DNA of 64,000 bases, taken from positions 62,001-126,000 of the forward strand of contig CBFFSA010000013.1 in assembly GCA_965644495.1 (NCBI GenBank). Reading direction: 5' to 3'. Of this stretch, positions 58,513 through 64,000 are shown in pieces. Both the position numbers and the translations under genes were made by a program. This DNA is from Perkinsela sp. CCAP 1560/9 (lineage: Eukaryota > Protista > Euglenozoa: Kinetoplastea). Within the stretch, counting starts at the first letter, position 1. Every line of letters starts with the position of its first letter. Under the pieces are notes generated by a model, which searched no databases, had not been told where the DNA came from, and saw only the letters and a program-made list of their open reading frames with translations.

Positions 58513-59271
58513 CTATGTCGAAACATTACAATCCTGAATAAAAATATCATAATCCCGTGGCCTTTGCTTGTGATCCAGAGCGTACACTTTCTCCAGCCGT
58601 TGTAACACCTCCAACCCCTCCACCACCCTGCCAAAACACACACAGGAGCCATACAGGTGGGCGTAGTCCACCTGCTCCCCGGTGGTAATAAAAAACTGAC
58701 TCCCCACTCTTGTGGGGGCGCTGTTCGCGGAGAGCAGCTGTCCGGGACCCTTTCCCCAGACACTCTCCCGAATCTCCTGCTCCCCATCAAACGTCTCCCC
58801 ATAGAGCGTGCGCTCCCCGGTGCCATCATAGTGCACCACGTCCCCGGTTTGTAGGCCAAACCCGGGCACGATGCGATGGAGTACACAACCCCTATAGTGG
58901 AGCTGGGGCCCCAGGGACTCGGCAAATCGATGAATCGTCTCGACCCGATTCAGATCCGTGTGGGGCTCAATCCCCGGAAGGGCTTCAGAGCCCGTACACA
59001 TGCGTTGAAAGTTTTCAACGGTCCGGGGGCAGCGAGTGCCGTACATTTCAAATTTAATATGGCCTAAAACAGTTGAAGGGGCGTCGACCGTGTTTTGATG
59101 CCGGGAGTGGACATAGCCAACTCGGGGTCGCGCGGCAAGGGTGAGACCGGCGTGCTTGTAACTAGGGAAGAGAGGGCCGGGGGTAGCAAAGGGAGATGCT
59201 CCGGAAGAAGACGTTTTGGGGGTTTGTCGACCAAGACTTCGGATTCGGGAGGTGATGCCGGACCAGGACAT
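58513..59271 (-). CDS. Cyclophilin-type peptidyl-prolyl isomerase, divergent
   Basis: CPRTVENF, HRIVPGF..QTGD, GSQFFIT, FGRVVEG; start assumed at MSWSG. Confidence 0.9.
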   Translation of the reverse strand: MSWSGITSRIRSLGRQTPKTSSSGASPFATPGPLFPSYKHAGLTLAARPRVGYVHSRHQNTVDAPSTVLGHIKFEMYGTRCPRTVENFQRMCTGSEALPGIEPHTDLNRVETIHRFAESLGPQLHYRGCVLHRIVPGFGLQTGDVVHYDGTGERTLYGETFDGEQEIRESVWGKGPGQLLSANSAPTRVGSQFFITTGEQVDYAHLYGSCVCFGRVVEGLEVLQRLEKVYALDHKQRPRDYDIFIQDCNVST

Positions 59272-59576
59272 GGGTGTGTGGAGGGTGCAAAGGTAGAAAG
59301 CAAGGTGTTGGTGATGAAAGAGTCGAGAGATTGTATTTGATGACTTAAGAATAGTGTGAAAGAATGCTCTAATGCTGATAGAAAAGATTCCTTGCCACTC
59401 GCACACTGATAATGCATAAAACTCGCACACTGATAATGCATAAAAACTCGCACACTGATAATGCATATTTTGAGCAAGCCCTTCAAAAAAAACTTGAGCC
59501 CTTTAAAAAAAAATTGAGCCATTCAAAAAAATTGGAGAAAGGCCCTTGGAAAAAAATTCTAGAAAAAAAGGCGGAT

Positions 59577-59999
59577 GCCAAGACCTTGTTTACCCGCCTG
59601 CAAGATAACAACGTCTGACGTTAGTGGGAAGCTATTTGCGAAGCCCAACAATTCCACCATACCCAACCCGTAATAAGCCAAGACCTTGTTTACCCGTCTG
59701 CAAGATAAAAACGTCTGACGTTAGTGGGAAGCTATTTGCGAAGCCCAACAATTCCACCATACCCAACCCGTAATAAGCCAAGACCTTGTTTACCCGTCTG
59801 CAAGATAAAAACGTCTGACGTTAGTGGGAAGCTATTTGCGAAGCCCAACAATTCCACCATACCCAACCCGTAATAAGCCAAGACCTTGTTTACCCGTCTG
59901 CAAGATAAAAACGTCTGACGTTAGTGGGAAGCTATTTGCGAAGCCCAACAATTCCACCATACCCAACCCGTAATAAAGCCAAGGCCTTGTTTACCCGTC
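59577..59999 (+). repeat. 100-bp tandem repeat (4 near-identical units plus a partial unit)
   Basis: GCCAAGACCTTGTTTACCCG starts at 59577, 59677, 59777 and 59877. Confidence 0.95.
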
Positions 60000-60648
60000 C
60001 GGCTAATAATTTCACCTTTGTTCCCGGTGAGGCCCCGGAGTTGCGAGAGGCCTCCATACCCCACAACTACCACCTTCCCCCCCTATTTAGCCGGGGTCGC
60101 GCGAGCGACCCCTGATAAATGGGGGGAAGGTGGTAGTTGTTTTGGGGGAAATGAGAGACCGAACGCACGGAGGGGCCGGCCGGGCCAATGAACCTAGATC
60201 TTGTTTACCCATTTGCGAAGCCCAACAATTCCACCATACCCCACCCTTAATAAAGCCAAGACCTTGTTTACCCGTGTGCAAGACAAAAACGTCTGACGTT
60301 AGTGGAAAGTAATTTGCGAAGCCCAACCGTCTGCAAGGTAAAATAGAAATGGAAAGCCCATTCTAGGAATCGGAAATATGCAGTTGAAGGAAAGTTGGTA
60401 AAACTTATAAAATAAAACTCACTAAAAGTGGCAGAATTTATTATGTAGCCCATGCCGCTTTCTGGAGAGTCACATCTTATGCAGAAGAGAAGAACCCGCC
60501 CAGCTTGGAGTTGAGTAGATGTCCAAACATGTTTAAAAATTGTATGGAAGAGTGAAATACGCACGTAAAGAGTGAAGTACGCACATGGAAGAGTGAAATA
60601 CGCACATAAAAAGCGTTAGAGAAAGGGACTGATGGGTCCTTCGGAGAT

Positions 60649-61655
60649 TCAAGAGGACTCCTGGGAACCGTCGACCAAAAATTGTGGGCGAGTTTTCCGA
60701 AGAATTTCTACGAACTCAAATGGCGATTGTTCTTGGAGCACTTCTTTTGGTCGAGCATTTATATCCCGCGAAACGGAGTCAAGATCCTTCTGCAAGATGT
60801 CACTAAACAAACGTCGTTTCGGGTAGAAATCTCGCACTACGCCGTTGAAAATTTCAGCACCCCTCTTCTCCCAACTTGCATACGGTTTACAAAAATACGA
60901 AGAGCAATTATAATTAAGCGACTAATTTACTTTCTCGTGTTTTGCAAACTCGGTTCCGTTATCATATGTTATGGAGTGAACCAAGAAACCTTGAAGAGCA
61001 CTGGTTATGTTTTCAGCGACCAGTGCCGATTTCTTGCATGTGAGCTTCTTTATATCCCGAACAGACTCTTTCGCTCAACCAAGGTGAGGAAGAATCCGCT
61101 GTGTCTTGTGCCTTCTATAAGGTCACATTCCCAATCACCGTATCGCTCCCGATTGCTAACAATATTCGGTCGCTCCTCAATGTCGGTGCGATTCGGAATA
61201 CCGGTACGGTTGGTTCCCCGACGGCGACGTTGACTACGTCTTCCTCCACGGCGCAGACAACTCTCCAAGTTCCCATGTTGACCATCATCCCGCTTGATAA
61301 ACCCGTATATTGACGTTCGGGATACTTTAATATCATCTTCTTTGCGCAAGACTACTGTAATTTGCTGGGGGCTAAAGCGCCTGCGTAGGAGAGACACGAC
61401 TTTGTCTTTAATCTCTCCTTTAATCATGCATGGGCGCGGCTGGCGTTTCAGCATGGACTGCTTCGCTGCTCGTTCAGCGCGCCTGGCACTGTACGTATCA
61501 TTTCGAAGTCCGCGTGCGAGTTCCCGGCTCAGAGAGGATTGATTCATATTCAATTTCGCGGCAATTTGGACTTGGGTGAAATTCTGTTGATTGTAAAGCA
61601 CCTCAATCATGGTGCGGTCCTCTGAATCTATACGTTGACTTCGTGGTTCACTCAT
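60649..61655 (-). pseudogene. IS30-family transposase (frameshift near 61050, TAG at 60922-60924)
   Basis: HTH QIAAKLNMNQSSLSRELARG; FSPQQI; IEERP..R.RYGDWECDLIEG; LVERKS; ITYDNGTEF; YFCKPYASWEK; INARPKEVL..SP.E. Confidence 0.92.
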
Positions 61656-61710
61656 ACTAAAATGCAACAAAAATTATCAAAAAAAAAGTCTTTGTGTTAA
61701 TATAGGCTTC

Positions 61711-61871
61711 ATGCATTATCAGTGTGCATTATGCGTTATCAGTGTGCATTATGCATTATCAGTGTGCATTATGCATTATCAGTGTGCATTATGCATTATC
61801 AGTGTGCATTATGCATTATCAGTGTGCATTATGCATTATCAGTGTGCGAGTTTTATGCATTATCAGTGTGC
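61711..61871 (+). repeat. 20-bp tandem repeat ATGCATTATCAGTGTGCATT, about 8 units (IS30-like element end)
   Basis: Direct reading. Confidence 0.95.
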
Positions 61872-62157
61872 CTACAGTCAGCAAAAAAACCGTTCGAATG
61901 TTTCGGTTTTTTTTCTTTGGTATAGAGCTATTGATTAAATATCACCGTTGCGCTGGTAATGTGTGCTAGTAGTGTAGGCATGAGTGTCACCTAATAGTAC
62001 CCGTAGATAGTTCGCCTCAGTTCGTTCTACCAAAGAAATAAGAACGAATATAAAAAAGTTTAGCATTCGAAAGGTTTTTTTGCTACCTATTATAGAGAAA
62101 ATCTTGTCCCAAAAAATAGATGAAACGTAATCGCCCAAGAGAGATTATGCCCGTAAA

Positions 62158-62412
62158 ATTAGTATTTAGTATTCCCCCCACGAGCCTTCAGCACTGCCTT
62201 CATATGGGCAGGCATACTGTCCACCTGGGCACGACATACTGAGGGTGGTATGTTCGCCCATTCCATTTTTACCCTCTCCCACAACTCTCGGACCCCGCTT
62301 GGTGGATCATCGTGCGCTGCAAGGCGCCGCTTGAGTTCTCCTCAAACGTTTTCGATTGCGTTTAAGTCAGGGGACTGCGGGGGCCACCGCATGACTTCAA
62401 ACCCGGTACCGC
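62158..62412 (-). pseudogene. Tc1 transposase C-terminal fragment, inverted relative to the adjacent copy
   Basis: WPPQSPDLN..ELWERVKMEWANIP..SMP..AVLKARG..TKY* on the minus strand. Confidence 0.85.
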
Positions 62413-62415
62413 GGT

Positions 62416-63252
62416 GTGTCTATGAGGTCCATCTCTGATACAGTAAATTTAAGTATCTCAACAATTTCTATGATATTAAAAAAAGAAAGGCCTGATACTC
62501 TCAGGATGCAGGGTGGATGCCCTCGAAAGCTTTCCGAGCCGTGCACACGCCGTGTGCGACGACTTGTGTTCTCCGGCAATTCTGCGCAAGAGGTATCATC
62601 TCAGCTGCGCCGCGAGGGCGTTGCTGATGTTGTTCCTCAGTCTATCCGAGTTTCGATGCACCGCTTCGGACACAAAGGTAAAAAGCGTGTCCGCAAGCCC
62701 TACCTGTCCAAGCGCCATCGCAAGCTTCGGATGGACTTTGCCACGGCCCATGAGCACTGGACAGTGCACGACTGGGCTCCAGTTGTATGGTCGGACGAGA
62801 CGAAGATCTCGCGCTTTGAAACGGGGGGAAGTCTTTGGACATGGGGGACCCCGGGGGAGGAACTGGGTGAAAAAGGGGTAATTCCCACGGTAAAGTACGG
62901 AGGGGGGCACATCATGATTTGGGTGTGCATGTCCCGAAGCGGTGTGGGGCATGTGCGTCTAGTTCAAGGGAACCTGAACGCCACACAGTACGTCGAGATT
63001 CTTGAAGAGAATCTTGCCCCCTCCATCGAAACTATGGGTCTAGACCCCCCAATGGTCATCTTCCAACAAGATAATGACCCCAAGCACACAAGCCATTGTG
63101 CGCAACGGCACCTCCGGGGTACCGGGTTTGAAGTCATGCGGTGGCCCCCGCAGTCCCCTGACTTAAATCCAATCGAAAACGTTGGGGGGGAACTCAAGCG
63201 GCGCCTTGCAGCGCACGATGATCTTCTTAGTTCCGAAATATATAAAACGTGA
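62416..63252 (+). pseudogene. Tc1-family DD34E transposase, truncated at both ends
   Basis: VVWSDETK, TVKYGGG, FQQDNDPKH, WPPQSPDLNPIE. Confidence 0.92.
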
Positions 63253-63888
63253 ATGCAACACGTGCAGCTTTACATTTTGTGGCATACAAATACTGCAAAA
63301 AAGAGGGAAAAACTTATTGGAAAGTGGATCCCTCAACGCAAAGTATTTGGTTCTCGATGTCACGACAACTACGTCCCAACACGAGATTCCAAAATGTTTT
63401 CCCAGCCCACGCTACATAAAAGAGTCTACTTCGCAGCAGTAGATGCCACACCCATACGATTGGCGATCTGGCCAATGAAAAATGGGGACGTCTTAAAAGA
63501 TAAAATTGAGCAGTATCCCGGTAAAATGGATATTATACTAGCGGAAGCTACAGCAATAGCAAATGCTATTCGCTGCGCTCATAACAATGGTTTTCAATTT
63601 GTTGTAATAGATAATGATAATACGGCTGCGTGTCACTCTTTTGTGAAAGGATATTCCCCGTGAGATACACTGGATCACATAATAAAAGGGTGTGAGTGTT
63701 TCAAAGGAAAGCTAGTGCTCTGTGACATACCCAGCGAAGAAAACATCGCTGATGTTGGGACGCGACCAGAGAAAGTGTACACTGAATCAGAATACAACTA
63801 TAGAAAGTTACAGTCGTGGAATCGACTTTGCCGCGCGTGGGACAATTACAAAAGGTTTGGTACGACATTCGCCAGCCGTGAAGAATGA
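63253..63888 (+). pseudogene. RNase H domain of a YR retroelement (DIRS/VIPER-like)
   Basis: AVDAT, IILAEATAI, DNDNTAA, then past an in-frame TGA IPSEENIADVGTR. Confidence 0.72.
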
Positions 63889-64000
63889 ATTGACCTATTA
63901 AATTTAGTTTACAAATGCTCGTAGTTCTGCATATTCACTAACCTTATCCCCGCTGTCAACTTACGTACTAAATAATACGCATACAGTATAAAACACAACT

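What the first reader, a model, noticed from the sequence alone, without database searches (positions are those of the whole stretch)
59397..61876. IS30-family transposon resident in a eukaryotic (kinetoplastid-like) chromosome
Seen: a near-complete IS30-type transposase with HTH, FSPQQI, GDWECD, ITYDNGTEF, YFCxPYxSWEK and INxRP motifs. It carries one frameshift and one stop. It lies between inverted arrays of a 17-bp motif (3 copies left, about 8 right), and the intact end begins TGTAG as the E. coli IS30 IR does. Known: IS30 is a prokaryotic DDE family with 2-3 bp TSDs. Eukaryotic counterparts are described for other IS families (IS630/Tc1, IS256/MULE, IS5/PIF, IS1016/Merlin), but I know of none established for IS30. 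Inference: this is a eukaryote-adapted IS30 lineage with multimerised transposase-binding sites, which has decayed in place.
Basis: partly seen in the sequence, partly recalled or inferred. Interest (0 to 1): 0.9.

Follow-up and report, generated by a model that had tools for sequence, protein, structure and literature searches.

The report
Bacterial-type IS30 transposon in a kinetoplastid
This is a dead, split copy of a jumping gene of the bacterial IS30 family, which has settled in the chromosomes of a trypanosome-related protist, multiplied into several families that moved recently and rebuilt its ends into arrays of repeats; I found no paper describing IS30 in any eukaryote.

Summary
Largely confirmed, with one correction. 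Window 59394-61872 is a decayed IS30-family element (frameshift, nonsense codon, 6-bp insertion). The 'TGTAG' end is not a terminus: a 6,676-bp Tc1-like composite split the 5' array there. The true end lies at C13:130663, and the element is flanked by a 3-bp duplication (CTT). The host is a kinetoplastid, probably Perkinsela-like. The genome has 96 IS30 profile matches on 24 contigs, 16 of them full-length without stops, in at least nine subfamilies plus deletion derivatives. 15 of 17 two-ended elements show 3-bp duplications; seven family-B copies are 97-99.8% identical. The transposases nest inside IS30 beside environmental bacterial elements (40-51% identity); one entry versus two is unresolved. 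They keep DD33E and the 26-bp end register, but all eight host elements counted repeat the end core (up to 24 copies) against 0 of 35 bacterial loci, and their leaders are pyrimidine-rich. Precedents exist for other IS families (IS481EU, IS3EU, Merlin); none found for IS30. Expression and pathway are untested. The scan reported this family before in at least nine other places of the same genome.

The parts
59391..59393 (.). 3-bp target-site duplication CTT; its partner follows the true 5' terminus at C13:130664-130666, outside the window
59394..59419 (+). Intact 3' terminal inverted repeat, 26 bp, starting GCCACTC; same end as in intact copy L002 and in derivative L017
59401..59467 (+). Three copies of the 17-18-bp end core (positions 8-25 of the terminal repeat), spaced 24-25 bp
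   Evidence: (D8)
59562..60343 (.). 3' non-coding part with about 4 tandem copies of a 100-bp unit and a 20-bp-arm hairpin (60063-60140); also present in L002; very high depth in short-read contigs, so an abundant repeat carried inside family A
60649..61655 (-). Decayed IS30-family DDE transposase gene (333 aa in intact copy L002; D178, D232, E266, DD33E). Breaks: 1-bp loss near 61053, TAG at 60922-60924, 6-bp insertion at 60911-60916
61656..61705 (-). Pyrimidine-rich leader ending in an AG one base before the ATG; candidate trans-splice acceptor (inferred)
61711..61872 (-). Eight units of the 5' array (20-bp period, one 24-bp); 5 further units and the true terminus lie beyond the insertion, up to C13:130663
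61873..61874 (.). TA target of the Tc1-like insertion, duplicated at C13:130551-130552
61875..64000 (+). First part of a 6,676-bp Tc1-like composite (604-bp inverted repeats, 98.7% alike; ends at C13:130550) that splits the IS30 5' array; holds a DDE_3 transposase ORF at 62416-63252
58513..59271 (-). Host cyclophilin gene; first in-frame ATG is 120 bp from the target site, so the element sits upstream of it and does not interrupt it

Best explanation
A bacterial IS30-family element entered the nuclear genome of a kinetoplastid (probably a Perkinsela-like, non-flagellated endosymbiont) long ago, once or twice, and became a resident DNA transposon lineage. SHOWN: the single-ORF transposase keeps the N-terminal HTH region and DD33E triad; elements are bounded by about 26-bp inverted repeats and insert with a 3-bp duplication at varied sites; the lineage split into at least nine subfamilies under purifying selection; non-autonomous deletion derivatives exist; the inner part of the end repeat is multiplied, mostly at 20-25-bp spacing (about two helical turns); leaders are pyrimidine-rich. 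INFERRED: the gene is expressed by read-through polycistronic transcription plus spliced-leader trans-splicing; the arrays are extra transposase-binding sites that help end pairing in chromatin; movement most likely (about 55%) still follows the IS30 copy-out-paste-in route (one-strand transfer end to end, host-resolved circle, staggered 3-bp integration), because the enzyme has the bacterial length and no added domain. The window copy (family A, 2,592 bp net) inserted at CTT upstream of a cyclophilin gene, was then split by a Tc1-like composite and mutated; it is dead.
For: NF033563 253 bits against cut-off 80. 96 matches on 24 contigs, 16 full-length and stop-free. Family B: 7 copies of 1,424 bp with 7 different 3-bp duplications. 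15 of 17 elements with 3-bp duplications. Paralogous empty site with a single CTT. Contigs of two other samples leave the window sequence exactly at 59393 and run on for 394 and 510 letters, as an empty allele would. Host: one-strand intronless genes, MRP family match, only one dynein heavy-chain match, LRR look-alikes from Euglenozoa and Discosea. Same families beside kinesin, PIG-P and HSP90 genes in assembly ERZ24900291. dN/dS 0.07 for A versus A2, synonymous sites saturated elsewhere. Trees. End multimerisation 8 of 8 against 0 of 35. Leader pyrimidine share 0.52-0.76 against 0.34-0.50 in 62 bacterial relatives.
Against: No RNA evidence: no listed holder is on record as RNA and the one guessed RNA run laid nothing. 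No abutted end-to-end junction in the assembly for families A or B. Monophyly of all host families is 96/85 under a mixture model but 93/75 under LG+G4, and two separate entries are not rejected (p-AU 0.34 and 0.27). All eukaryotic copies come from one organism label. The letters of the supposed empty alleles were not shown. The leader test uses related sequences, so its p value is inflated.
Confidence: 0.85

Rival explanations
1. Same resident lineage, but it now moves by cut-and-paste like most eukaryotic TIR elements, with the arrays acting like subterminal repeats and the second strand cut by the transposase or a host nuclease.
For: Array-ended layout, longer elements and deletion derivatives resemble eukaryotic TIR transposons; no end-to-end junction found; no strong symmetric target consensus in 15 sites.
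Against: The enzyme is collinear with bacterial IS30 transposases, without an added domain; circles and junctions are short-lived and need not show in an assembly; no excision footprint was identified.
Confidence: 0.3
2. Two independent entries from related bacteria: clade I (A, A2, D, E, F, G; long arrays) and clade II (B, C, H; 1-3 repeats per end).
For: The clades are only about 40% identical, less than each is to its best bacterial match; AU tests do not reject either clade joining the bacterial sister group.
Against: The best trees join them; both share extra end copies, pyrimidine-rich leaders and 3-bp duplications.
Confidence: 0.3
3. Bacterial contamination, chimeric assembly, or a recent dead-on-arrival transfer.
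For: Amoeba cultures carry bacteria (PMC5601477 discarded thousands of bacterial scaffolds); the protein passes a bacterial family cut-off; no single read spanning the window locus was available.
Against: Dozens of sites on 24 contigs up to 4 Mb, each with its own target duplication; nesting with Tc1-like and host repeats; same insertions in a second assembly; no bacterial protein above about 51% identity in three searches; saturated synonymous divergence between subfamilies.
Confidence: 0.02

Closest known systems
IS30 family of bacterial insertion sequences (E. coli IS30; IS4351; NCBIfam NF033563)
   Same: Single-ORF transposase with HTH region and DD33E triad; 26-bp inverted repeats in the same register (AACGCA/AATGCA at positions 18-23 in E. 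coli IS30 and family A); short target duplication.
   Different: Eukaryotic host; end core repeated up to 24 times; elements 1.4-2.6 kb instead of 1.1-1.2 kb; duplication 3 bp (E. coli IS30 2 bp, PMC9333248); termini GGC/GCC/CCC rather than TG in most subfamilies; pyrimidine-rich leader; no strong hot-spot consensus seen.
Unnamed environmental bacterial IS30 subclade (P0006-P0221, L093-L172; source names include Verrucomicrobiota and Geobacteraceae MAG proteins)
   Same: Sister group in the trees (97/86 for the joint clade); 40-51% identity; GGC-starting 26-bp ends; 2- or 3-bp duplications where visible.
   Different: Always one repeat per end; purine-richer leaders; bacterial gene neighbours where checked.
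IS481EU of parabasalids, and IS3EU/ISL2EU (PMC10045372)
   Same: Precedent for an integrase-like bacterial IS becoming a eukaryotic family with autonomous and non-autonomous members by horizontal transfer.
   Different: Different IS family (NF033577 IS481 scores 62 bits against cut-off 224); TNT..AYA termini, 4- or 15-bp duplications and short repeats there.
Merlin (IS1595-related) in Perkinsela and Bodo (PMC8101967)
   Same: DNA transposase in early-branching kinetoplastids; a Merlin-like ORF lies inside the composite that splits this copy.
   Different: Other superfamily; the paper found no terminal repeats or target duplications in Perkinsela and judged it inactive, whereas these IS30 elements have both.
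IS607-like sequences in eukaryotes (PMC3673617)
   Same: Prokaryote-to-eukaryote transfer of an IS, with intact copies in an amoeba.
   Different: Serine-recombinase family; that survey of all 24 IS families in about 430 eukaryotic genomes (2012) retained only IS607, no IS30.

Membership tests
IS30 family | Transposase matches the IS30 family profile | tested here: met
   NF033563 253 bits, cut-off 80, positions 1-266 of 267 for intact copy L002
IS30 family | DDE triad with DD33E spacing | tested here: met
   D178, D232, E266 in family A; D237, D293, E327 in E. coli IS30 from L082; all three residues also present in the window copy
IS30 family | N-terminal helix-turn-helix DNA-binding region | tested here: met
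   HTH_38 and HTH_32 matches below gathering cut-offs; helical N-terminal region predicted with pLDDT about 80-90
IS30 family | About 26-bp terminal inverted repeats | tested here: met
   Outer 26 bp in register with E. coli IS30 and bacterial relatives; 26 bp per PMC9333248
IS30 family | One repeat per end in a compact 1.1-1.2-kb element | tested here: not met
   Extra copies at one or both ends in 8 of 8 host elements, 1.4-2.6 kb for autonomous ones; 0 of 35 bacterial loci. This marks a variant, not another family
IS30 family | 2-3-bp target duplication | tested here: met
   3 bp in 15 of 17 elements; the two family-C cases read equally as 4 bp; bacterial relatives 2 or 3 bp
IS30 family | Phylogenetic placement inside the family | tested here: met
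   trees were rooted on IS30-family members only
IS30 family | Copy-out-paste-in transposition through end-to-end junctions | tested here: inconclusive
   No junction in the assembly; transient circles cannot be seen with these tools
IS30 family | Hot-spot and end-targeting insertion preference | tested here: inconclusive
   15 pooled sites give only a weak bias next to the duplication
IS481EU / IS3EU | Transposase of IS481 or IS3 type with TNT..AYA or TG..CA ends and 4-15-bp duplications | tested here: not met
   IS481 profile 62 bits against cut-off 224; ends and 3-bp duplications differ (PMC10045372)
Host is Perkinsela | Kinetoplastid without flagellar genes | tested here: inconclusive
   MRP match, one dynein heavy-chain match, no paraflagellar-rod match but no positive control; no rRNA tree made; 21 Mb against 9.5 Mb reported for Perkinsela sp. 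CCAP1560/4 (PMC5601477)
Catalogued in Repbase, Dfam or ISfinder | An entry for a eukaryotic IS30-like family | not testable with these tools
   Only open-access literature searched: none found

The most novel reading that the evidence does not exclude
An undescribed eukaryotic DNA-transposon superfamily ('IS30EU') that is still active and still moves by the bacterial copy-out-paste-in route in a nucleus, using spliced-leader expression and arrays of end repeats.
Probability: 0.4. Interest if true: 0.88.

Novelty: new variant of a known kind. Interest (0 to 1): 0.72.

Why it matters
It adds IS30 to the short list of bacterial IS families that founded a eukaryotic lineage, and the link is still close (40-51% identity, same end register), so the steps of adaptation can be read: 1-3 end repeats in one clade, up to 24 in the other, and new leaders. 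It shows recently mobile DNA transposons with intact ends in a kinetoplastid, a group where trypanosomatids have none (PMC12278014) and the known Merlin copies lack ends (PMC8101967). Near-identical intact copies make a standing question testable: can copy-out-paste-in transposition, which depends on host replication and repair, run in a eukaryotic nucleus? A compact 315-aa transposase adapted to kinetoplastid expression could also be a genetic tool.

Tried and rejected
TGTAG as an IS30-like terminus: rejected. Contamination or chimera: rejected. In-frame fusion of the array to cyclophilin (the 317-aa ORF at 58513-59466): an artefact of reading through the element end; the inferred empty site has a stop at the target. 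L140, a metagenomic element whose ends resemble clade I ends, is not the closest relative in the tree. End-to-end junction searches were negative; the single hit on C6 is not followed by a repeat. No relative in viral contigs; genome contigs gave one 34% hit; no solved structure. The AlphaFold model from 7 sequences was poor in the catalytic half (pLDDT 56) and was not used further. A homologue search with a host V-ATPase subunit to name the host returned nothing. The mixture-model AU test did not finish and was repeated under LG+G4 with fewer rows. The paper on IS30 end organisation was not held, so the binding role of positions 8-25 rests on my own knowledge.

Full report
Observation. The minus strand of 60649-61655 encodes an IS30-type transposase in two frames. 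Against the intact copy L002 (contig C10, 333 aa) the window copy has 16 substitutions, a 1-bp loss near 61053, a nonsense codon at 60922-60924 and a 6-bp insertion at 60911-60916. The three catalytic residues survive. A 17-18-bp core occurs three times at 59401-59467 and eight times, inverted, at 61711-61871. Between the left array and the gene lie about four tandem copies of a 100-bp unit, which L002 also carries.

Correction of the ends. Comparing copies shows that family A starts GGCACCC and ends with the complement of GCCACTC. The window's left end at 59394 is therefore the intact 3' end. The right 'TGTAG' is not an end. Fetching C13:123700-130900 showed a 6,676-bp insertion with 604-bp inverted repeats (98.7% alike) and a duplicated TA inside one array spacer; after it come five more array units, the true terminus at C13:130663 and CTT, the same triplet that precedes 59394. 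TGTAG is the reverse complement of one spacer base, that TA and the first two bases of the insertion. Net of the insertion the element is 2,592 bp. Short-read contigs of other samples also show GGGTGCC directly after the array.

Host. All long ORFs upstream are intronless and lie on one strand. The genome has a match to the kinetoplastid MRP family and only one dynein heavy-chain match. A neighbouring LRR protein resembles clusters labelled Euglenozoa and Discosea, as expected if amoeba data sets include their endosymbiont. Perkinsela is reported as intron-free, polycistronic and without flagellar genes (PMC5601477, PMC11613528). Kinetoplastid is well supported; Perkinsela-like is likely but untested by a tree, and the assembly (21 Mb) is larger than the 9.5 Mb reported.

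Family in the genome. The NCBIfam IS30 model gives 96 matches on 24 contigs, 16 full-length without stops; L002 scores 253 bits against a cut-off of 80. Clade-I terminus patterns match 75 places with 0 in the control. I sorted the proteins into clade I (A, A2, D, E, F, G and one more from the second assembly; 51-75% identity between subfamilies) and clade II (B, C, H; 54-64%), about 40% between clades. Seven family-B copies are 1,424 bp, differ by 3-45 bases and each has its own 3-bp duplication. Over all families 15 of 17 two-ended elements have one, the two family-C cases being readable as 4 bp; chance is about 1 in 64 each. One B copy sits in a host repeat whose empty paralogue has the triplet once. 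L017 is a 1,239-bp deletion derivative with both ends and a duplication, and short-read contigs show further internal deletions. In two other samples the contig through the cyclophilin gene stops matching exactly at 59393 and continues for 394 and 510 letters; I read this as an empty allele, though those letters were not displayed. Between subfamilies selection was purifying: dN/dS 0.07 for A versus A2 and saturated synonymous sites elsewhere. The lineage is thus old in this host and was mobile recently.

Origin. Three protein searches found close matches only in one long-read assembly, ERZ24900291, for all six hits traced; there the elements flank kinesin, PIG-P and HSP90 genes. It may be the same or a very near sample, so it is not independent for distribution. 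Next come bacterial IS30 proteins at up to about 51%. Trees put both clades (100% each) inside the IS30 family next to an environmental bacterial subclade. They are sisters at 96/85 under a mixture model and 93/75 under LG+G4, and AU tests do not reject two entries.

What changed. The outer 26 bp keep the IS30 register: family A has AACGCA (left) and AATGCA (right) at positions 18-23, exactly as E. coli IS30 in locus L082, and the nearest bacterial relatives also start GGC. Positions 8-25 are what is repeated. All eight host elements counted have extra copies at one or both ends (A 24+2, A2 14+5, D 8+2, F 3+3, B 1+2, C 1+3, H 3+3, derivative 15+7), against none of 35 bacterial loci. The 50 bases before the start codon are 52-76% pyrimidine in nine host subfamilies, 34-50% in 62 bacterial relatives and 50-76% in six host genes (samples are related, so I lean on the non-overlap rather than the p value).

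Mechanism. Shown: DDE enzyme, inverted ends, 3-bp staggered integration, derivatives, recent spread. Inferred: expression by polycistronic read-through and trans-splicing; arrays as extra binding sites on one helix face. E. coli IS30 moves by copy-out-paste-in through a figure-eight and a circle resolved by host replication and repair, and leaves 2-bp duplications (PMC9333248). Since the protein is collinear with the bacterial enzyme I give that route about 55%, cut-and-paste about 30%, the rest to mixed routes. Searches for joined ends in the assembly were negative, which does not decide it. No RNA data were available.

Novelty. Eukaryotic offshoots are published for IS481, IS3, ISL2/IS5, IS630, IS256, IS1380 and IS1016 (PMC10045372, partly own knowledge), and a 2012 survey of all IS families in about 430 eukaryotes kept only IS607 (PMC3673617). 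Five literature searches found no eukaryotic IS30; Repbase, Dfam and ISfinder could not be checked. I class it as a new variant of a known kind: an IS30-family member by protein, ends and duplication, but with a eukaryotic host and rebuilt ends. The scan's earlier notes on other pieces of this genome reach the same reading; I formed mine before reading them and do not count them as support. Interest 0.72: surprising to a transposon specialist and testable, but with conceptual precedent, one host so far, and this copy dead.

Noticed in passing
window 61875-64000, continuing to C13:130550 (L083:176-6851): 6,676-bp Tc1-like composite with 604-bp inverted repeats and TA duplication; carries a DDE_3 transposase ORF, an RVT_3-like fragment, a Merlin/IS1595-like ORF (L083:3338-4186, minus) and a host-type LRR gene (L083:4778-5578, minus). 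Possible gene-carrying DNA transposon with intact ends in a kinetoplastid.
   Followed up: partly
L087:320-601 and L059:820-1024; 528 places in G000: A 20-mer resembling the 3' part of the kinetoplastid spliced leader (resemblance from memory) heads a dispersed repeat of a few hundred bases; candidate leader-headed short retroposon.
   Followed up: partly
G000 C20:103294-107852 (L085, L086): Nine tandem units of about 570 bp, each with a family-G 5' end, its array and the start of the transposase gene: a satellite-like amplification of an IS30 end.
   Followed up: partly
window 59562-60343: 100-bp unit and hairpin inside family A reach far higher depth in short-read contigs than the flanking genes, so they belong to an abundant separate repeat.
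   Followed up: no
L089:218-470 (C11:146617-146866): 250-bp hybrid of a family-A 3' end and a family-G-type 5' end in inverted arrangement, no target duplication; perhaps a deletion across nested copies.
   Followed up: no
L023 and L056 (C20:191627-192406): Subfamily E keeps a full 340-aa open frame but no end repeats were found within about 3 kb; candidate for an end-less or domesticated copy.
   Followed up: partly
L038 versus L002 (C10:603687 and C10:693393): Two family-A 5' ends share the same flank, pointing to a segmental duplication or rearrangement on C10.
   Followed up: no
window 72-57996, minus strand: Many related 170-570-aa LRR genes are interspersed with housekeeping genes; a large lineage-specific family.
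   Followed up: no
L055:3832-4902 and L056:8841-10124: A DDE_Tnp_4 (Harbinger/IS5-like) gene and a long reverse-transcriptase ORF next to IS30 copies: the genome hosts several more mobile-element types.
   Followed up: no
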